DNA of 64,000 nt from Podarcis muralis (taxonomy: Eukaryota), in NCBI RefSeq assembly GCF_964188315.1, contig NC_135667.1:20212001-20276000 (forward strand). The letters run 5' to 3'. A model generated the notes under the pieces. That model worked only from the letters and a program-made list of their open reading frames with translations. It made no database searches and had not been told where the DNA came from. The position numbers and the translations under genes were made by a program. How positions within the stretch are numbered: position 1 is the stretch's first letter; each line of letters begins with the position of its first letter. This document shows positions 1 through 57,084 of this stretch, one piece after another.

Positions 1-232
1 TACTGATATGAAGGAAAGGGCTTATCGGGAGAGAAAGGATCCCGTAAACAGGAATAGCGTGACGACCTCCCCGCTCCCAAGTAATATGCCTACTAGCAAT
101 GGATAGAAAAAACATCACCGGCATAAAAATCCAATACCCCCGACACCTCTAATATTTAAATGGGAAATCTAACGATGTCTTCTGTTTGTTCTTTTCTTAC
201 TTTCATTTGGTATACTCGTTCGTCTTAAAAAG

Positions 233-343
233 GGAGTGGAGGATGCTTTCTACACCCTGGTGCGAGAAATCCGAAAACACAAGGAAAAGATCAGCAATGG
301 GCGCAAGAAGAAATCTTCCAAAAGGAAGTGTATTATCCTCTGA
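233..343 (+). CDS. Terminal coding exon of a classical RAS GTPase, KRAS exon-4B-like ([36 protein letters not shown]); upstream exons lie left of the window
   Basis: Pyrimidine tract plus AG at 231-232. Phase-0 start exactly at the G151 boundary of RAS exon 4. [14 protein letters not shown] is the H/K/N-RAS signature, followed by a polybasic HVR, a CaaX box and TGA at 341-343. AATAAA at 826-831. Confidence 0.93.
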
Positions 344-899
344 AGAAGAGAGACTCTGTTGCACAGTTGGGAGTGCAAAACCCCCCTTTTTGAGTCTGGG
401 TATTTTCCCAAGCTGCAAGATAAATTCTGATGGCCATGCCCCTCACCCATTTTCAGCTGGAGGGCGAAGGTCGTTTTGAGTTCTTACTGTCAATTATTTT
501 ACTATTTTTAAAAACTGGGACGTTGCATCCAGTATGAGGATTTGTAACCACATTTGATGTTCTGTTGCTTCTTGCCCCTTCATTATTATTTTTTAAAAAG
601 ATCATCTTGTTTCTGGTCCTTAGGATTATAGAGGTCACTCCTAAGTGTGACCTGGTGTAGACTGATCCTGCAGGTTAGATGGAAGGGTTAGCACGAAGCC
701 AGTGTCTCAGTCAGAACCTTAGGGGCCTTTCTCATTTTTTGTAGCATTTTACCCACCTTGGTTCTCCATGAGACTGAAGAGGAAGCCACATAGACTTGGC
801 ACCATTGTCTTTTTGCTAGCAGAGGAATAAAGTTAACCTTGGACAGAAGGTGATCTGCTGAAGGTGGCAATGAGTAATGCCAAAAGAGAAAATGTGGAA

Positions 900-2460
900 A
901 GCCAAACCCTCTCCGTAGCTGAATATTTCACCCCACTATTAAAATAGATGGTGCTCAGTTATTTTTCTTCTGGGTGGTTGAAATTCTGTATTAAGTTGGT
1001 TTCTCTCTCTCTGGTTTTCATTTGGGCTGTTATAACTTCTGAGCAACAGCTCCCACTTTAAAATGAATGGGGAAATGTACTTTTGCTCAGCAAGTTTTAT
1101 AAAAAATGTGTGGTGATGGGGAGATATCAACAAGTTATGAGAGGTACTTTTAAATGGCTGTACAGCTTCCACCATCCAAAGGCAGTGGCACCTGTTTGTG
1201 AAAAAACAACTGTTGGAGATAGCTGAATATTTGCACCATAGAAGTGTCCTAAATTAACCTGCCTCTGTTGCTCTCCTTTACTAATTGGTTCTTGGGAGTA
1301 TAGCGATGTCGACTCTCTTTATAAACAGAAGGGAGGAATATGATCCAAAGGTCTCTTAATCATCCCTCTTTTTTTAGTCTCCTGCATAGTCCTGGGGTTG
1401 CTTGGATGGGTTGAAATATAGGTACTTAAATGCTGGCATGGAGAGAAAAGAGTCTGAATTTATTATCCTGTTAGTGTTTATAAGCCATCGAAATTACGTT
1501 CTGTCATTATTTGATCTTATTCTCTTCCCCCCATCCCACCCCAAAATCCCACCCTTGGAATCCTGTGTTGATTTGGTCTTTTTCCATGGTCCTGAGGATC
1601 TGTACAATAAATGCCACCACTTGGAATAAACCTGTGAATAAGCTACCTGATCTACAAGACCTGACTTTTTCTAAAGGGTATGTGTGGTAGATTTATGGTA
1701 GTTTTCTGGTTATCTTTCTTGGAACAGATTGTTTTGGGAAACTGCAAAACATGTGGAGGCTTTCAAGGAAATTGTAGTTGTCTGTTCACAATGGTGCTAG
1801 AATCAGCAAAGCCTTCTATCAGAATATGGTACCTTTCAGCCAGGAGTTGCCTTTGTTTAGCTCAACTCCCTATTTTGTGGATTTTCTCCCCCACCCTCAT
1901 GTGCTTCTCAAGAACATGTACCTATTTGGGTTGCATCTATCTAGTTCTGTTCTTATTGTTTCCATCCAACTTTTTTGAACGTGATTTTTTTCAACAGAAA
2001 TCCTGCAGATGTGGTAACTCTTCAAGAAGTGTGATAAGGCATGCTTGTTGAAACAGCCCACCGGGACCTCAGGTTGTGTTTTCATAACCAGCTCCTAATT
2101 TATTTTACAAGTTACCTGCTATTCAGTTGCTGTTGTTCTCTTCTCAATGTTTTTCTTCCCTTTTGACTTAATATGAGTATCACTGGAAACATATGACAAA
2201 AGAAAACCAGACTGTTATCTCTGTAACTGGCCTTCTAGATACTCCAGTACCTATTTCAGGGATAGTTGGGGTAGGGGCACAGCTTTTCAAGCAAAAATAT
2301 TTTTGTAGTGTAGATGAAATTGTTCCTTGCTTAATTTTTTTTGAAGTGATGGATGCTGCCTCTGAAAGGAATTTACTTAGTTTGGACGGACACCCCCCCC
2401 CCCCCCCCCCGTGGTCTTAACCATACTGGACCCCTTTTATAATATGTTTTGCTACTGTTC
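900..2460 (-). mobile_element. Degenerate L1-like LINE remnant (endonuclease region)
   Basis: Broken minus-strand frames give KRVDIAILP (like ADIxxLQETH) and YNSPNENQ (like YAPN). Many stops; boundaries approximate. Confidence 0.45.
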
Positions 2461-3449
2461 TTCTCTCTGTGATGGAAGGGGGTGGAGAGAGGCTTTAGAT
2501 AAGAAGCTTCCAAGCTCTATAATTTCTGGACTAATTTCTGGTCTTGAAGCTTACTGACTCCTGCAAAAGTAGCAAGGGGTGAAGCTTGGGTGTATGTATC
2601 AATCAAACACCCCTCCTGCTGATTGTCCCTTCCCTATCTGGCAAATGCTAATTTGGGGAAATCATGTGTTTGCTGCATCATTTGTAGTTCAAATCTGCAG
2701 CAGCTGCAAAATAATTGCAATGGTCAGGGTAAGGCAAGCCTAGGGTGAGCTAATTCCTGAGGGTAAGCACTCCTTAGAAGGCTAACAAATGGATAGGAAT
2801 ATGACTCGAGGCTGCAGAGGAGAGGGCCAGGCGCATCATGAATGGGAGACACTGCATAGCTATTCATGCCATCCTTACAACAAGGAGGGCTACATTTTAG
2901 AAGGGATTTGAGATTTTCAGAAATTCAAAGATTCTCAGGATGCACGGTAAAAGCATTCCATGCCTGTGCAGATTCCTCCTAACACACCTTCAAAATTATT
3001 TGTGGGCCTAATACAGTGGTTAAATGGGCCTGTTCTTGAAATCAGCCCTGTTGCCTTTAGCCAAACTCCTGACCTGCACTTTTGTTTATATGAAAGAAGA
3101 CCTTTTGTTTTTCCTGAACGTGATTTTTATTAGGCTGAAAAGGCTTCTCTTAAAGATGCCTAAAAATGCAACATTTGAAAATGGACAATAGTCTACTTTT
3201 TTTCACAAGTCACAAAAATACTGGAATGTTAGATCCCGGTTAACAGAGTGTTTATCATTAGGTGGGAGCAATCAGCTGTCTGAATGTCCCACAGACTTGG
3301 CAAAAAAAAATGTGAATATTGTGTCCACATGAAGATTAAACTTAAAAGTGGTTCACTCCATTTATTTTTTACAGGTTCTTTTATCTGTCTTGCATCAGGA
3401 CTTCTTAGCAGCTTCCTTTTCTCTCCACAAGCTAGGAAAGGGAATGGTG

Positions 3450-3645
3450 TTAGGTAGGTGGTGGCTGTAGGTACTGCAGTTGCAACTGAGGCCAAGAGCA
3501 TCCCTTGGATTCAGCCCAGTCAGGTTGTTGGTTGAACGGTAGCACTAAGAAGGAGACTGCAAGCAGTGCAATGAATGCAGGGAGCCCTAGAAGAACCAGA
3601 TTCCAAAGGATGTGCAGTAAGAGGCAGCTGGATGAGACAAGAAAC
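3450..3645 (-). CDS. KASH5: KASH5 terminal exon: TM plus KASH peptide (...ILWNLVLLGLPAFIALLAVSFLVLPFNQQPDWAESKGCSWPQLQLQYLQPPPT*)
   Basis: WPQLQLQYLQPPPT matches mammalian WPHLQLCYLQPPPV. Phase-2 acceptor at 3645 (alternative in-frame acceptor at 3627). TAA at 3450-3452. Confidence 0.92.
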
Positions 3646-4439
3646 CTGTGTGGAGAGAGGACATTGTGCTGTTCTTATTCCTGTGGGATAATTTCATCCC
3701 ACCAACTTCAACAAACCCGTTCCAAGTTAACAAGTTTTGGAGGGGGTGGTGATAAGGAGACAAAAGCAAAGAGGAGAAACAGCCATTGGGGAGAGTTGGG
3801 AAAGTTGATGGAAGCAGTTGTGGTTTTCAGATAAGGCAGCAGAATCTCCAAAGAACAGCAAGGTGGAGCAGGGTGTGCAACACTGAACCACCCTGCCACT
3901 TTGTATTGTAGACTGCACCTATTTTACTGTGGCCACCTGGGGACAGGATAGTAAAAAGTGTGAAACACTAATACTGCCAGGAATATAAGAACAATTATGT
4001 GCAGCTTTCTCTCTGCGGGAGACCATGCAGTGTTTATGTGAGGGCCACTGGAGGGTGTTCCCCACCTGGACGTGTCTTGTTTTACCATCACTGGTGGGGG
4101 GGGGACAAAGACACCAGAACAAGTTGTGAGGATCCACCCACTATGACCTCACCCTTGCTTGGACCATGCATAACAGGAGCAAAGGGGGAGGAACTCCCCC
4201 TGCCAAGGGAAGTTGTGGAGACCAAGCAGCAAACTTCAGCACTGGACAGGAGGTGTCAAGTACTGCAGCCCATGTTGGTATAGTTGCCTTCTTGTGTTGT
4301 CAGTTACTGAGATTCTTGTTAGGAAGTAGGTAGTGCATTTCATTTCTCCATGTATTTTTAGAGACAAGTTCAAAAAGCTATGTCACTTAGTGACAGAAGT
4401 TTGGCAGGCCATTGGACAACTACCACTGAGCCCCCAAGT

Positions 4440-15671: not shown

Positions 15672-16975
15672 TCTATAAACTTTTCAATGTTTCTTTTTTA
15701 AATGTTTATTGAATTTTCAGTTTAACATTTCAAAATAAACAATTTACATAATACCATTTAATCAGTGGCTTCCCTCCTTCCCCTTCCATGCTTCATTTTG
15801 TTTGCCTATTATACCTGCATATTTTACTATAACCATTTTAGTCAGTTCTCCAATCGTACAATACTCGAATATTAGCTAACCTGTTGAATTTATCTTAATG
15901 CTGCCAGCGTTTTCGACTGTGTGCAATTATTTTCCATATACTCAACAAAAGATTTCCACTCCTCTTCTTGCTCTCTTATTCTATATGTTAGACCTGCTAG
16001 TTCCACAAATTCTATCATCTTAAATTGCCAGTGTTCCTTACAAGGGACCTCCCTCACTTTCCATTTTTGGGTTAATAATACATGAGCTGCTGTTGCAGCA
16101 TACATAATTTTTTCTGACACCTGGAAACTTCTATTTGAACTATTCCTAACAAGAATGCCTTTGATCTTTTTGGGAAAGTTGTTTTAAACGTTTTTTTCAT
16201 CTCATTGTAAATCATTTCCCAATACTCTTTAACCTTTTTACATGCCCACCACACATTTCCAACACGAATCTGATTCTACTTTATACATCTTAGCCAACCT
16301 ACTCAGAGTTAGATACCATCTATGGATCATTTTCATGTGATTCTCTTTCAATGTATAGCATATAGTAAATTTCAAACCATATCTTTTTTCCATTCTTTGA
16401 GGCAACTTAAATTATTAACAATCAGGATCATTTAGAATAATTTTAGGAAGTACAGTGGTACCTTGGTTCCCGAAGGGCTTAGTTGCCGAACAAATCGGCT
16501 CCCAAATGCCACAAACCCAGAAGTGTTCCAATTTGCAAATGTTTTTTGGAAGCCAAACATCCAACACGGCTTCTGCTTGAGTGCAGGAAGCTCTTGCAGC
16601 CATTGGAAGCTGCGCCTTGGTTTTCAAATGGATTCAGGAGTCTGTTTGACGAATGAAGTTTGAGAACCAAGGTACCACTGTATATTAATTTTGATTGATG
16701 AAATTTAACCTAGTAGGGAAAGCGTCATCCTTTACCATATTGCCAACTCTTTTTAAATCTCCTTCCACAGTTTAATATAATTATCTTGAAATAAGTTGAG
16801 ATTTCTCATGGTCAGCCAAATCCCCAAATTTCTCGACTGCTCATCCATGTTTTTGACTAACATCTTGGTCTTTTCTGTGTCTATTTTAAAAACCCGCCAC
16901 TTCTCCAAAACATTTAATTTGCTCTAATGCCCTGGGAACACTTATGTTCAGTTTCATATATATATCTAGATTCCT
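15672..16975 (-). mobile_element. Degenerate 3' fragment of L1 ORF2, interrupted by a MITE
   Basis: HVWWACKKVKEYWEMIYNEMKK and AHVLLTQKWK...ELAGLT are typical of the L1 ORF2 C-terminus. T-rich tail remnant at the left end. Confidence 0.8.
16453..16680. mobile_element. Tc1/mariner MITE nested in L1 (related copy at 61858-62074)
   Basis: cagtggtacc...ggtaccactg TIRs with TA TSD. Confidence 0.8.
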
Positions 16976-18922: not shown

Positions 18923-19325
18923 CTAAAGTTTGGAAGGGAATGTTACAATTTGATTAGCCTGTATGAGGATCCAGAATTCCAATATAACATTTTCCAGCAA
19001 AAGGATAATCTGAAGTGGTTTGTGAAAGCGTCTTGTGCAGATATATTATCCAAACAGGCATAAACAGTAGTTTCTAAAAAGCCAGCTGTCACAAGTTCAT
19101 CTAACAAGCTTTATAGAATTATCCACATGCACAACACATTTGCATGTGTATTCAACTACATTAACTCCTTTCTTCTCTGTTTCAGAAGAACTGGCTGAGA
19201 TAAAAACCCAAACTCTCCAACCCAAAATCCAAAATGTCATTTGAATAACTCAAAAAAATTGAGACAACAGTGTGTAAGCTTTACAAAACAGAAAAGTTTA
19301 CCAGAAACTAAACTGAAGCACCTAC

Positions 19326-19443
19326 CAGCTGTCGGGCTTGTGTGTGCAATTTACTATTTTCTTCTTCCAGACTTTTTGAGAAAACCTTCAGATCCTCTAA
19401 TTCATTTGCCATGACCCTAGCTTGTTCCAAGGCTGGCTGGGTG
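19326..19443 (-). CDS. KASH5: KASH5 exon TQPALEQARVMANELEDLKVFSKSLEEENSKLHTQARQL
   Basis: Strong similarity to TQQALQFAKAMDEELEDLKTLARSLEEQNRSLLAQARQA. Phase 2 to 0. Confidence 0.95.
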
Positions 19444-19863
19444 CTGTAATAAAGAAGGGTGGTTGTTTAGTTATAATGATCTGAATTCTACCTCCAAACT
19501 TCACTATCATCAAGCTATGTGAGAAAGATCCAAGAACTGGAGACGAAACAGGGGGTTGAAAAGTAAAAGAAAAGCTTAATCCAAACCCAAACATAAGTTG
19601 AGTAGGTAGCACTGTACTCAGAAGGGAAGGAAATAGGGAATGGTATTGAAGGTAAGGAAATACATGCACATCAGAGGGTACAGTGTCAGATTACAATAAC
19701 TCCTTTCAGCACAACCAATGGCCCCTCAATGTTCCATAGATTCAACGAAGCTCTTGCCCCACTTCCTACAGCCCTGTCTTCATTACTGACTAAATCTTCT
19801 ACTATTTGCCTTCTTGTATTAGTCATGATTAATGATACCAGGTCAAGCACTTCCAACATTTAC

Positions 19864-20025
19864 CCTTTCAGCTTCCCCTTCAGGTCACAGATCTCCTCAG
19901 AGAGTCTTGAGTTGAGCTCTTCTGCAGCCTCAATAGTCTTTTGCAGCTTGGTGTTCTGCACTGCTAGCTGCTTGTTGCCATGTTGCAGATCTTGGATGCT
20001 GTTTGTTAGGTCTACAGCATCTTCC
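19864..20025 (-). CDS. KASH5: KASH5 exon EDAVDLTNSIQDLQHGNKQLAVQNTKLQKTIEAAEELNSRLSEEICDLKGKLK
   Basis: Similar to ADLLSSLEDLELSNRRLVGENAKLQRSMETAEE. Phase 2 to 2. Confidence 0.95.
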
Positions 20026-20275
20026 CTTTTGGAAAAAAGCAGGTGGGAAAATAAGCCAGAATTATATTTTCCCTTTGTTTACATCATGGATAAATTTACA
20101 TCAAATCCTGTTTTTCCTTCCTCTGCAGGTGATCAGAAGAAGGTGGATAGCCTTCACCAAGACTGTTCTTTAAAGAGGAAGAAAGAAAATAATCCAAAGT
20201 AAAAAACGTTTTGCATATCTATTTATATTAGGCCTCACAGAACTCTTGGAAGGCAGGAAAGATAAAATTATTATA

Positions 20276-20501
20276 CAGTGGTACCTCAGGTTAAGTACTT
20301 AATTCGTTCCGGAGGTCTGTTCTTAACCTGAAACTGTTCTTAACCTGAAGCACCACTTTAGCTAATGGGGCCTCCCGCTGCCTCCGCCCCGCGGCCACAC
20401 GATTTCTGTTCTCATCCTGAAGCAAAGTTCTTAACCTGAAACACTATTTCTGGGTTAGCGGAGTCTGTAACCTGAAGCGTATGTAACCCAAGGTACCACT
20501 G
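20276..20501 (-). mobile_element. Tc1/mariner MITE (inverted relative to the 14685 copy)
   Basis: TIRs plus TA TSD. Confidence 0.85.
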
Positions 20502-20776
20502 TATTAGTGAAGCTGGAGATTAATCTGAAAAGCACAACATGTACAGCAACATTCCCTAAACCTGTGTCTCCCCAAAATACAACTCCATTCAGCTTCAACC
20601 AGCATTGCTAGTGGTCAGGGATGATGGGAATTGTAGACAAAAATATTTGGGAAGTCACCACCAGGGCAAGGCTGATGTAGAGTCTCAATTTGTTTAAATG
20701 TTACTATTATGCTTTCTTAAAAGTTGAGAAAGTCACAGATTCATGTATCTTCTCCATCCTCCATGCATGCATGCAT

Positions 20777-20815
<39 letters not shown>
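20777..20815. repeat. (GCAA)n microsatellite
   Basis: Visible tandem repeat. Confidence 0.95.
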
Positions 20816-20904
20816 CCATTAGAGTTCAAGCACAAATTCCAGCCAGGCAAAAATACATTGGGCGGGAGAGGAGCATGGCTCCAGAAGGTGTATGGCCTGG
20901 GGAG

Positions 20905-20910
<6 letters not shown>

Positions 20911-20946
<36 letters not shown>

Positions 20947-22211
20947 TTATTTACGAAGAAATACACAGTTTACATATTACAGACATATACATATACGTAT
21001 ACAAATACATGTTACAAACATATACATATACAAATAAAGAAAAAAGAAAAAGAAAAACAGAAACAAAAAATAGAAGAAACAAACAAGACATATACAGTTA
21101 CGAATAACAAAAACTTCAGTCCAGCTTAGTCTTGGAATTATCAATTCTTATATTATTTCTACAGTATTTCTAAAACAGTCTACTTCGATGATATTAATTA
21201 TCGTCTACTGATAAATTATTTATTCCCTGGATCGACTCAAAATAAATTAAAAATTTGTTCCATTCATCTTTATGTTTAACTGTATTGTTTGGACTTATTT
21301 TCCGTGTTAATCTCGCTAATTCAATATATTGATATAGCCTTATTTGCCAATCTCCGATTGTGGGTAGGTCCGGGGTTTTCCATTTTTGGGCGATTTGGAT
21401 TCTTGCCGCGGCCATAGCATACTGAACAAAGGTTTGATCTATTCTCTTTATTTCTTTTCCAATCATGCCTAACAGAAACAGCTCGGGATTCTTGGGAAAA
21501 TTATACTTCAAAATTTTTTTCAGTTCCTCGTAGATTTGTGTCCAGAATTCCTTCACTATTTCGCAAGTCCACCAAGTATGAAAAAAAGTCCCGACCTTGT
21601 CCCTGCATCTCCAACATATATTATCCACACTTTTATACATCTTTGCTAGCTTTGCCGGAGTTAAATACCAGCGATATGCCATTTTCTCTAGGTTTTCACG
21701 AAGGGCTACACAGGCTGTGAATTTTACACCTTTCATCCAGAGTGTCTGCCACTTATTATACTCTATATTATAACCAAGATCTTTTTCCCATTTTAACATC
21801 GCTCCCTTCACCAGATCTTCTTTGGTGTCCCACTCTAATAATTGTTTATACATTTTCGACAGGATTTTGTCATTGCTTTCCAGAATTTCTACCTGATACC
21901 TTGATTTTTTCTCACTCATCCCCACTCTCTTATGTTCCCCCCATAAGGCATTGATCTGGTGAAAACGTAACCATTCTTTTATTTTATTTTTCAATTCCTC
22001 ATAGGGCTTCAACTTCCATCCTTCCTCAGTCTTCACCAGAAGGTCCTCATATGTGTATCTTTCCTCATTCATATTAATTTTCTTTATTTCAGTTATTTCC
22101 GTTGGGGAGAGCCACCATGGAATACCTCTTTCAATCAGATTTCTATACCTCTTCCACACTTCTAGTAGTGGGCCTCTAATTATATGACTGGAAAAGCCTC
22201 TGTGAGTCTCC
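20911..22211 (-). mobile_element. Young 5'-truncated L1 with an open ORF2 C-terminus, 33-nt poly(A) and 17-bp TSD
   Basis: Stop-free frame from about 22210 to 21194 (CWRC...HTWWTC zinc-knuckle region). T33 at 20911-20943. TSD ggcctggggagagttct at 20894-20910 and 22212-22228. Confidence 0.95.
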
Positions 22212-22428
22212 GGCCTGGGGAGAGTTCTGAGGGCCAGATAAGGAGGCCTGCATCTGGCACCCAGGCCTGAGGTTTTCCATCCCTACTCTAACTACTCATC
22301 ATCTTAAAAGAAAATTCACCATGCCTCAGGTTCCCTTAGAATACTAACAATACAGACATCTCTCAGGGAATTTAATATTGAAACCAAGGCCATGTGTAAG
22401 GCAATATCTGACTACTACAATTACTAAC

Positions 22429-22609
22429 CCCTCTTGTCGACAGTCTGAGATCCAATCTTTCATAACTGCACAGAAGGTAGAAAAATCAACAGCAATCCCT
22501 CTCTCTTGAGGGTCCAACCTCTTATATAGAGACCGAAACCTCCAGTCTTCACAGTTCTGCCCTGTCATCTCCTGCAAGTATTCAATGATTCGGAAGACAG
22601 ACACCTCTC
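22429..22609 (-). CDS. KASH5: KASH5 exon (EF-hand-like) GEVSVFRIIEYLQEMTG...LDPQERGIAVDFSTFCAVMKDWISDCRQE
   Basis: Similar to GTVAVAQVLAYLEAVTG...VDLDTFLVVMRDWIAACQ. Phase 1 to 2. Confidence 0.95.
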
Positions 22610-23464
22610 CTATAACCAGAATACAGGTAGACAGAATTACACAGGTAGGTAAAAAACTCAAATATAAAAATTGCATAGAACAATAAATCTGGATTTAGTT
22701 GTCTCTGCTATCTACCAATGCAAGCTATTATGATACGTTTTATATGTCTTTGTTTCTCCAGTTTAGAAAAAAATGAGGCATTTGTAACTGATAAAATCGT
22801 CAGTCATAAATATATGAACTGTATATATAAACTACACATATCTGTATTGTTTTAAAATACCCCAGAGCAGTAGCTCACAAAGCAATTTTGCTTGGTGTGA
22901 AAAGTAATGTGAATTTATATTTAATTTTTAATCCATTGGCTTCTAGTCTCCATGATTAAAGAAAATGAGTGATGTATCAGGAACCAACTTTCAAGAAAAA
23001 TAGGATTTTTAAAGGAATAGTAGCTTTGTACCACTGCTTCCCTTTCCCACCCACTTCCTTCTTATTATTACCTTTTTCTTGTCTTTTCTTCTCTTTCTAT
23101 TATACCTTAAGTAAAATAAATTTATGTAACTTTGAAGTACTGGGAAGGGTCCTGGATAATGTCTATCAATGAATTATTTTTATTTATTTTTTGCACATCC
23201 TAGTCAATAAAACTTTGTCTAAGAAGAAGAAAGTATTCCATCTTTCTGCTAGGACTTATTGTCATTAAAGTTGACCTGGAATTGTGTACTTCTTCAATAC
23301 AGTCATGTTAGGTTCACTGACAAAATGACATATAGCCAAGAGTCTATAATATATAACCTGATGCTAAACTATTCTGAAAGGTATTTGCACATCTTAACAA
23401 AAAACTGATCTCCCAGCAGTTTTGAAGACTGATAGTTTTCAACTGATATTAAAAAACTTTCTAC

Positions 23465-55689: not shown

Positions 55690-55882
55690 ATAGAGCCTGG
55701 CAGCTGGGGCGAGGGGGCCAGCCCCTCTGGGGAGATGGGGGACACTGGGGAGAAGGGTCTGGACAACGATGCAGAAGGGGTCTGGAGCCCAGATATTGAG
55801 CAGAGTTTCCAGGAGGCCCTGGCCATCTACCCACCCTGTGGGAGGCGGAAGATCATTCTTTCGGATGAGGGGAAGATGTACG
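55690..55882 (+). CDS. TEAD2: TEAD2 first coding exon (I/M)[63 protein letters not shown]; whole exon starts at 55673
   Basis: Invariant TEA-domain sequence. ATA start in accATAg context; in-frame ATG at 55735. GTAGGT donor in phase 1. Confidence 0.95.
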
Positions 55883-56815
55883 GTAGGTGGGACTTAACTT
55901 TGACCCATTAGACCGGCTGCTCTTGTCCTTAGTTCTCTTTGGGAATCGTCCCGCAAGCCATAATATATGAGTAGCAATAGGCTTAGAATATGTGAGGTAA
56001 AAAAAGAAGAAGACAACGCTTTTCTAGCTCCCTGAAGAAATGGAAGGAGCTGGGAAGGTGGCCACTGATGGTGCTGTATTCCTGCGGTACACCGCTAGCA
56101 GTGCCTTTTCCTTTCCAGCTCTGAGAGGAGGAAAGAGGTGGTCTTCAGATGCAGCCTCCATGGTACTGTGCCATAGATGCTGTGCAGAAGGCTCTCTTTA
56201 GGGACAGAAAAGAAACAAAAGAGCCAGCAGGGCCAGGACGAGAGATGAGGGAGCTACATGCACCGTTGTAAACAGAGGTCCTACAATGTGCCTAGACCTA
56301 TAATGACAGGGACTCACCTGGAGGCAGTTCTTACTCTCCATAGGTGAGCAGCTAATGACAGTTCCATTTTCAGTTCTGCAATTTGTAGCATCCCTTTCTT
56401 TCAGGGAACTGCATTTGGACAAGTCACTCTCTCTTAGCCTGACCCACCTCACAGGGTTGTTGTGAAGATAAAACCACAGAAAGCGCCCTGGGGTCTTTAG
56501 AGGCAGTGTGGGGTGTACTTTTGGTGATGGGGGACAACCGTGTGCAAGGTCTGCTGGAGGAGGGGTCAGGTTTGCATCCACCCACCTTTTTTAAACATCT
56601 GCGGTTGGCGTGACCTGACAGTCCAGATGATTCAGAAGTTAGCAGGGTTGTGTCTCTGAGCATGTGCAGAGTTAGGGAGGCTGCAACCTGCCCCATGTGG
56701 CAACCTAGCATTGTTGTCAGTGGCATGGTCAAGAGAGGCGGGTGAATTCCACCTCTGTATATGGTGCCCAAGTTGGATGGGTTGTTTTCCTGATTTCCTG
56801 CCTCTTCTCTCTCAG

Positions 56816-56880
56816 GCCGCAATGAACTCATTGCCCGCTACATTAAACTGAGGACAGGCAAAACACGGACAAGGAAACAG
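56816..56880 (+). CDS. TEAD2: TEAD2 exon [22 protein letters not shown]
   Basis: Invariant TEA domain; canonical sites. Confidence 0.98.
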
Positions 56881-57021
56881 GTAAATGTGATGGGCTTGAC
56901 ATGAAGCCTAAGACTGCAGGAAAAAAATCCGAGGTGTGTGGGGAGAATGAGGCCTGGTGAGATTTCCTCCTTTCTCTCCACAGAGTTTCCTGCTAAATCT
57001 CTCCCCCAACTCCTTCCACAG

Positions 57022-57084
57022 GTCTCCAGTCACATCCAGGTTTTGGCCCGGCGGAAAACCCGTGAGATTCAGGCCAAGCTCAAG
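57022..57084 (+). CDS. TEAD2: TEAD2 exon VSSHIQVLARRKTREIQAKLK
   Basis: TEA helix 3; canonical sites. Confidence 0.98.

What the first reader, a model, noticed from the sequence alone, without database searches (positions are those of the whole stretch)
233..343. A classical RAS gene (KRAS4B-like, CaaX = CIIL) tail-to-tail with KASH5, where placental mammals have none
Seen: an intron-bounded exon encoding [36 protein letters not shown], missed by the ORF track. Established: [14 protein letters not shown] is H/K/N-RAS, not RRAS (the RAS-family gene near this block in human). The basic HVR without a palmitoylated Cys is KRAS4B-like, and a Leu-ending CaaX usually directs geranylgeranylation rather than farnesylation. 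Inference: this is the fourth classical RAS paralogue (KRASBL type, reported in non-mammalian vertebrates), predicted to be a GGTase-I substrate with different membrane targeting. The acceptor at the exact exon boundary argues against a retrocopy.
Basis: partly seen in the sequence, partly recalled or inferred. Interest (0 to 1): 0.75.

Follow-up and report, generated by a model that had tools for sequence, protein, structure and literature searches.

The report
Lizard KRASBL last exon, already described
This is the real, spliced and well-expressed last exon of the lizard's fourth classical RAS gene (KRASBL), but a 2023 paper already described that gene, using a closely related lizard whose sequence is identical here, so the finding is correct and ordinary.

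Summary
Window 233-343 (+) encodes [36 protein letters not shown], preceded by a pyrimidine-rich tract and an AG acceptor. RNA reads prove the splice: 227 reads of a stranded RNA-seq run, plus two independent transcript contigs, join position 233 to an upstream exon ending ...FVETSAKTRQ. That is the RAS exon 3/4 junction at codons 150/151, intron phase 0. Depth is 0 in the intron and about 350x in the exon. The 3'UTR runs to about 1616-1634.

García-España & Philips 2023 (PMC9882654) named KRASBL. They report it in jawed vertebrates except mammals and birds, and describe its geranylgeranyl-type CaaX. Their lizard reference (Lacerta agilis XP_033027004.1) matches this exon at 36 of 36 residues, and also matches the 10 upstream residues read from RNA.

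KASH5 lies on the minus strand, tail-to-tail, with its stop codon 3.1 kb away. TEA-domain exons follow at about 56 kb, so this is not the KRAS locus.

Not testable here: exons 1-3 (left of the window), absence in mammals, and actual prenylation. The scan also noted this same gene in the overlapping window to the left (s1-193715). That is the same DNA, not other DNA. Verdict: already known, low interest.

The parts
1..232 (+). 3' end of the last KRASBL intron (intron c); pyrimidine-rich tract at 181-229 and AG acceptor at 231-232
   Evidence: Sequence. The tract is 72% pyrimidine. RNA depth is 0 in 1-134 in the stranded run X22. All three + frames of 1-232 carry stops and nothing RAS-like, so there is no 4A-type exon in this part.
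233..343 (+). Last coding exon of KRASBL: residues 151-186 (end of helix alpha5 plus the hypervariable region, CaaX = CIIL) and the TGA stop at 341-343
   Evidence: Translation. KRAS4B 151-188 at E = 2e-11. 36/36 identity to Lacerta agilis KRASBL XP_033027004.1 as printed in the paper's Suppl. File 1. 227 spliced reads enter at 231/233.
344..1634 (+). Main 3'UTR of KRASBL; AATAAA at 1606 and 1625; transcript ends at about 1616 and 1634
   Evidence: X22 depth is 141-377x up to 1608 and falls to about 16x after 1609. Molecule ends pile up at 1616 (29) and 1634 (9). All reads are on the strand that means + strand RNA. Poly(A) signals are.
1635..3886 (+). Weak continuation of + strand RNA: a minor long 3'UTR or read-through
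   Evidence: X22 depth is 1-19x, first mate on the minus strand only. Contig X2 runs 231-2504 and contig X1 runs 627-3302.
3450..3645 (-). Neighbour gene: last coding exon of KASH5 (transmembrane helix plus a luminal tail ending QPPPT, stop TAA at 3450-3452). It converges on KRASBL.
   Evidence: It has the highest hydrophobicity among stop-terminated minus-strand segments. The acceptor (cacag at 3650-3646) is inferred by eye. The Pfam KASH model gave no hit, so this exon is assigned from the TM + PPPT signature and its collinearity with the KASH5 exons below.
19311..22676 (-). Neighbour gene: KASH5 N-terminal exons (EF-hand_9 within 22347-22676; KASH_CCD profile positions 3-53 within 19863-20078 and 54-93 within 19311-19466)
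   Evidence: Pfam PF14658 scores 50.8 bits against a cutoff of 37. Pfam PF14662 scores 53.4 bits against a cutoff of 43.3, and 30.8 bits on the next exon, with profile positions collinear on the minus strand.

Best explanation
Window 233-343 is the fourth and last coding exon of the lizard's KRASBL gene, followed by about 1.3 kb of 3'UTR. KRASBL is the fourth classical RAS paralogue of jawed vertebrates and the sister of KRAS. The gene's first three coding exons lie just left of the window.

Shown here: the exon is spliced to a RAS exon 3 at the conserved phase-0 intron between Q150 and G151. It is transcribed from the + strand at substantial depth. It encodes the end of helix alpha5 plus a 21-residue hypervariable region, [21 protein letters not shown].

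Inferred from established CaaX rules and from the KRAS4B paradigm: C183 is geranylgeranylated by GGTase-I because the last residue is Leu. The -IIL tripeptide is then removed by RCE1 and the new C-terminus is methylated by ICMT. With no second Cys there is no palmitoylation. Instead the seven Lys/Arg of RKKKSSKRK hold the protein on the acidic inner leaflet of the plasma membrane. S179 sits where KRAS4B has S181 and may be a phospho-switch that weakens this binding. The C20 lipid should give a tighter, less exchangeable membrane anchor than farnesylated KRAS4B.
For: The translation and acceptor are as described. The best matches among solved structures are KRAS4B residues 151-188 (E = 2e-11).

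RNA evidence: X22 has 227 reads, with 0.98 agreement, whose loose end at 231 encodes ...FVETSAKTRQ. Contigs of two other studies bridge the same junction (X1, 883 nt; X2, 3155 nt, with 889 nt upstream of the junction). Depth is 0 in the intron and 350x in the exon, on one strand only.

Literature: KRASBL is defined in PMC9882654. Its lizard reference sequence ends [47 protein letters not shown], identical to this exon and to the 10 upstream residues read from RNA. It shares the Val in PFVET, where KRAS and frog KRASBL have Ile. Frog KRASBL matches 34/36 with no gap, whereas KRAS4B matches 28 residues and needs two gaps (hand counts).

All HVR hallmarks listed by the paper are present: a K-E-K motif, a polybasic domain, Ser four residues before the Cys, a single Cys, and Leu as the last residue.

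The locus is not KRAS-like: KASH5 is on the minus strand and TEA-domain exons lie at 55.8-57.0 kb.
Against: Only 36 of 186 codons lie in the window, plus 10 codons seen as RNA loose ends. The G domain, the start codon and introns a and b were not seen. I built no phylogeny of my own, so paralogue assignment rests on identity to a published reference, HVR hallmarks and synteny. I did not show that a separate bona fide KRAS gene exists in this genome. The prenyl type is a rule-based prediction, and some CaaL proteins (RhoB, for example) are substrates of both transferases. The tissue of the RNA runs is not known to me.
Confidence: 0.95

Rival explanations
1. It is the 4B exon of the lizard's true KRAS orthologue, which merely acquired a Leu-ending CaaX.
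For: KRAS4B is the best match among solved structures. The helix alpha5 part and the KHKEK motif are shared with it.
Against: The tail is 36 residues against 38 in KRAS4B, needs two gaps to align, and carries KISNG / SSKRK in place of KMSKDG / KSKTK. It is 36/36 identical to the protein that the defining paper lists as lizard KRASBL, and 34/36 to frog KRASBL. Its neighbours are KASH5 and a TEAD gene. From my own knowledge these are chr19q13.33-type genes and not KRAS-locus genes.
Confidence: 0.02
2. It is a decaying relic, a retrocopy fragment or a lineage-specific duplicate exon that is not part of a working gene.
For: Only one exon is visible in the window, and the ORF track missed it.
Against: The exon is bounded by a used splice acceptor and is joined in hundreds of reads to a RAS exon 3. 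It is expressed at about 350x with a defined poly(A) end, in runs from at least three studies. Its protein sequence is unchanged relative to another lacertid genus. A retrocopy would have no intron.
Confidence: 0.02
3. It is an alternative terminal exon borrowed by an unrelated upstream gene (a chimeric transcript).
For: The upstream exons were not read here.
Against: The 30 nt upstream of the junction encode FVETSAKTRQ, the exact end of a RAS exon 3, with 0.98 agreement among 227 reads. No second loose-end consensus at 231 was listed.
Confidence: 0.01

Closest known systems
KRASBL of the sand lizard, Lacerta agilis XP_033027004.1 (annotated 'GTPase HRas-like'), the lizard reference in García-España & Philips 2023, PMC9882654
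   Same: All 36 residues of the last exon are identical, as are the 10 preceding residues read from RNA, including the lizard-specific Val in PFVET. CaaX (CIIL) and the implied length of 186 aa are the same.
   Different: Nothing at the protein level in the part that can be seen. It is the orthologue in another lacertid genus.
[quoted passage not shown]
   Same: The tail is 36 residues, with KEK, a polybasic run, SSK/PSK before the Cys and a Leu-ending CaaX. Frog matches 34/36 and shark 27/36, both ungapped (hand counts).
   Different: Frog has K174 and CVIL. Shark has a rearranged basic run (KNGKKKKPSKK).
KRAS4B (the 4B exon of KRAS)
   Same: The intron position is the same (Q150|G151). It shares helix alpha5 ([19 protein letters not shown]), a polybasic HVR without a palmitoyl Cys, and Ser four residues before the prenyl Cys.
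   Different: KRAS4B is two residues longer, has a longer Lys run and ends in CVIM/CIIM (farnesyl type). It lies at a different locus, and its gene carries an alternative 4A exon.

Membership tests
Classical RAS (H/K/N-RAS group) as opposed to RRAS/MRAS/RAP | C-terminal helix alpha5 sequence [14 protein letters not shown], encoded at the start of the last coding exon | tested here: met
   [14 protein letters not shown] at exon residues 1-14. All 60 best PDB sequences are KRAS. The RRAS2/MRAS tails printed read differently.
Classical RAS (H/K/N-RAS group) | Invariant switch I/II effector signature in the G domain | not testable with these tools
   Exons 1-3 lie left of the window. Only the last 10 residues of exon 3 were seen, as RNA loose ends.
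KRASBL (García-España & Philips 2023) | Conserved intron c in phase 0 before the last coding exon; four coding exons in all | tested here: inconclusive
   Intron c is met: spliced reads join ...ACC AGA CAG | GGA GTG, i.e. Q150|G151, phase 0. Introns a and b and the exon count lie outside the window.
KRASBL (García-España & Philips 2023) | CaaX ending in L or F (geranylgeranylation type) | tested here: met
   CIIL followed by a stop. The paper's Suppl. Fig. 6 lists CIIL/CVIL for reptile and amphibian KRASBL.
KRASBL (García-España & Philips 2023) | KRAS4B-type HVR: a K/R-E/D-K/R motif, a polybasic domain of at least 4 basic residues before CaaX, S/T upstream of CaaX at the KRAS4B S181 position, and no palmitoylatable Cys | tested here: met
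   K167-E168-K169. RKKKSSKRK has 7 basic residues. S179 lies four residues before C183, as S181 does before C185 in KRAS4B. There is a single Cys.
KRASBL (García-España & Philips 2023) | Closer to reference KRASBL sequences than to KRAS4B, KRAS4A, HRAS or NRAS | tested here: met
   36/36 to Lacerta agilis KRASBL and 34/36 to frog KRASBL, against 28 identities with two gaps to KRAS4B. These are hand counts from sequences printed. I built no tree.
KRASBL (García-España & Philips 2023) | A locus distinct from KRAS, coexisting with a bona fide KRAS gene in the same genome | tested here: inconclusive
   The locus holds KASH5 and TEAD exons, not KRAS neighbours. Whether the same genome has a separate KRAS could not be checked from one window.
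GGTase-I substrates | Cys-aliphatic-aliphatic-Leu/Phe at the C-terminus; actual transfer of a C20 geranylgeranyl group | not testable with these tools
   The sequence rule is met (CIIL). The lipid actually attached needs a biochemical assay.

The most novel reading that the evidence does not exclude
The position of the gene may add something small. KRASBL sits directly tail-to-tail with KASH5 in a KASH5 - DKKL1/DKK3-like - TEAD block, the counterpart of human 19q13.33. That would pin the fourth RAS ohnologue to that paralogon and name the exact interval (beyond the 3' end of KASH5) where mammals lost it. In addition, weak KRASBL read-through transcripts run antisense across the last KASH5 exon, which could couple the two genes. 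The main text of the defining paper gives no synteny for KRASBL. Its Suppl. Fig. 7 is an image that I could not read and may already show the neighbours.
Probability: 0.3. Interest if true: 0.25.

Novelty: already known. Interest (0 to 1): 0.12.

Why it matters
The finding confirms with RNA evidence that a lacertid lizard expresses KRASBL, a geranylgeranyl-type sister of KRAS4B that mammals lack. The gene is of some interest to RAS biologists: it is a natural experiment on how the lipid anchor and the polybasic tail set RAS membrane behaviour, and on why mammals kept only farnesylated forms. However, the gene, its distribution, its tail motifs and the prenylation argument were published in 2023, with a near relative of this species as the example. 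This window adds only transcript boundaries and the neighbourhood.

Tried and rejected
- **Pfam on the 36-aa exon:** no family. This is expected, because the piece holds only the tail end of the G domain and the rest is unstructured tail. The PDB sequence search settled the family instead.
- **Pfam on the presumed KASH5 last exon:** no hit. The assignment rests on the TM + PPPT signature and on collinearity with the EF-hand_9 and KASH_CCD exons.
- **Search for a 4A-type alternative exon:** only 232 bases of the intron are in the window. All three frames carry stops, nothing is RAS-like, and X22 has no RNA depth in 1-134. The rest of the intron cannot be read.
- **Literature search for other names of a fourth RAS gene:** the terms 'KRAS4B-like', 'fourth RAS', 'HRas-like', 'RAS ohnolog' and 'KRAS paralog' gave nothing relevant beyond the one paper. 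One search call failed on a disallowed character.
- **Not run on purpose:**
  - The search for homologous proteins, because a 36-aa query only sees proteins of 20-63 aa.
  - All RAS proteins would also collapse at 50% clustering.
  - A tree of my own, because the comparison sequences exist only as printed, OCR-damaged text in a supplement and have no reference.
  - A joined exon 3 + exon 4 model. The 10 upstream codons were translated by hand from the 30-letter loose-end consensus and sent to no tool.

Full report
**Observation.** Window 233-343 on the + strand translates to [36 protein letters not shown] followed by TGA. Directly upstream lie an AG at 231-232 and a tract of 47 bases that is 72% pyrimidine. 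A phmmer search of the 36 residues against all PDB chains returns KRAS4B residues 151-188 at E = 2e-11, and the 60 best distinct sequences are all KRAS.

**Is it a used exon?** One search for public runs found RNA and probable-RNA data sets of the same organism. I laid four runs on window 1-4000.
- In the stranded RNA-seq run X22 the depth is 0 in 1-134, 85x in 135-268 and 350x in 269-402. It stays at 141-377x up to 1608, and all of it has the first mate on the minus strand, which in the usual stranded libraries means + strand RNA.
- 227 reads have a loose end just before 231, with consensus CCTTTGTAGAGACCTCTGCCAAAACCAGAC (agreement 0.98).
- Read together with the AG at 231-232, which the mRNA and the intron end share, this gives TTT GTA GAG ACC TCT GCC AAA ACC AGA CAG | GGA GTG GAG. 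In protein that is FVETSAKTRQ|GVEDAF.
- This is the end of RAS coding exon 3 joined to the last exon at codons 150/151 in phase 0, the conserved 'intron c' of all vertebrate RAS genes.
- Transcript contigs from two further studies carry the same junction: X1 (883 nt) and X2 (3155 nt, of which 889 nt lie upstream of the junction, enough for 450 nt of coding sequence plus a 5'UTR).

Depth drops from 289x to 16x after 1608. Molecule ends pile up at 1616 and 1634, next to AATAAA signals at 1606 and 1625, so the main 3'UTR is about 1.3 kb long. A thin continuation of + strand RNA (1-19x) reaches about 3886.

**What it is.** A full-text search for 'KRASBL' finds one paper, García-España & Philips 2023, PMC9882654. 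[quoted passage not shown] According to the paper the gene arose with NRAS in the second round of duplication. It has the four-exon structure, a K/R-E/D-K/R motif, a polybasic domain before CaaX and a conserved Ser/Thr upstream of CaaX. Uniquely among vertebrate RAS genes, its CaaX ends in L or F and so signals geranylgeranylation.

The paper's Suppl. File 1 prints its lizard reference, Lacerta agilis XP_033027004.1 ('GTPase HRas-like', 186 aa). That sequence ends ...[47 protein letters not shown]. It matches the window's exon at 36 of 36 residues and the ten residues I read from the RNA loose ends. The match includes the Val in PFVET, where chicken KRAS and frog KRASBL have Ile.

Hand counts from the printed sequences give these comparisons:
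- Frog KRASBL: 34/36, no gap.
- Elephant-shark KRASBL: 27/36, no gap.
- KRAS4B: 28 identities, with two gaps.

Every tail hallmark in the paper's definition is present: K167-E168-K169, RKKKSSKRK (7 basic residues), S179 four residues before C183 (as S181 is before C185 in KRAS4B), a single Cys, and Leu as the last residue. Earlier notes of this scan call the genome a wall lizard. I did not verify the species, but full identity to another lacertid fits.

**Neighbourhood.**
- On the minus strand, an ORF at 22347-22676 matches Pfam EF-hand_9 (50.8 bits, cutoff 37).
- Stop-free stretches at 19863-20078 and 19311-19466 match KASH_CCD profile positions 3-53 (53.4 bits, cutoff 43.3) and 54-93. They are collinear on the minus strand.
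- The most hydrophobic stop-terminated minus-strand segment is 3453-3674. After a likely acceptor at 3647-3646 it encodes a transmembrane helix and a luminal tail ending QPPPT, then TAA at 3450-3452. This is the KASH signature, although the Pfam KASH model did not score it.
- KASH5 therefore runs from about 22.7 kb down to 3.45 kb and converges on the RAS gene. The two stop codons are 3.1 kb apart, so tail-to-tail is confirmed.
- TEA-domain exons lie on the + strand at 55.8-57.0 kb. Earlier follow-ups place DKKL1/DKK3-like at 28-36 kb (not retested by me).

From my own knowledge, KASH5 (CCDC155), DKKL1 and TEAD2 are neighbours at human 19q13.33, and none of them is a KRAS-locus gene.

**Mechanism.**
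- Shown here: a spliced, polyadenylated + strand mRNA whose last exon encodes the end of helix alpha5 and the tail [21 protein letters not shown].
- Inferred from established CaaX rules, which the paper also states, and from the KRAS4B paradigm. GGTase-I attaches a C20 geranylgeranyl group to C183. RCE1 removes -IIL and ICMT methylates the new C-terminus. There is no palmitoylation because there is no second Cys. The polybasic run supplies the second membrane signal by binding acidic lipids of the plasma membrane. S179 is a candidate phospho-switch. The C20 lipid predicts a tighter anchor than that of farnesylated KRAS4B. None of this was or could be tested here.

**Limits.**
- Only 36 of 186 codons are in the window. 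Exons 1-3, the G-domain signature and introns a and b were not seen.
- I built no tree of my own. The comparison sequences exist here only as printed and partly OCR-damaged supplement text without a reference, so I did not type them into tools.
- I did not run the two large protein searches. The word search cannot see full-length relatives of a 36-aa query, and the operators asked that the representative search be spared when the protein is not open.
- Absence in mammals cannot be tested with the collections on hand.

**Verdict.** Both the observation and the interpretation are correct. However, the gene, its phylogenetic distribution, its tail motifs and the geranylgeranylation argument are published, with a confamilial lizard as the example. 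This window adds RNA proof of the last splice, the 3' end, and the convergent arrangement with KASH5. The same gene was also noted by the scan in the overlapping window to the left (s1-193715), which is the same DNA. Novelty: already known. Interest: low.

Noticed in passing
not in the window: PMC9882654 Suppl. Fig. 6: The paper states that KRASBL is absent in birds. Yet its own table of KRASBL-type CaaX tails lists XP_025918807.1 (186 aa, CVIL) from the kiwi Apteryx rowi. Palaeognath birds may have kept the gene.
   Followed up: no
window 1635-3886 (+) over 3450-3645 (-): Weak + strand RNA continues past the main KRASBL poly(A) site: 1-19x in X22, plus contigs to 2504 and 3302. It crosses the last coding exon of KASH5 in antisense, so the two convergent genes overlap at the transcript level. 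No minus-strand (KASH5) reads were seen in these runs.
   Followed up: partly
window 1192, and 472, 1310, 1469, 1491: All four runs carry a TGT insertion behind 1192 and the same base differences at these 3'UTR positions relative to the window. The assembled individual differs from the sampled animals here, or the assembly is wrong at these sites. No difference inside 233-343 was among those listed, but 40 differences were not shown.
   Followed up: no
window 21194-22159 (-): A 321-aa open reading frame (362 aa stop-free) that looks by eye like the C-terminal part of a LINE ORF2 lies inside a KASH5 intron. A shorter decayed relative lies at about 15890-16405 (-).
   Followed up: no
window 55780-57045 (+): Three TEA-domain exons ([14 protein letters not shown]..., [34 protein letters not shown]) mark a TEAD gene. 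By its position next to DKKL1 and KASH5 it is presumably TEAD2.
   Followed up: partly
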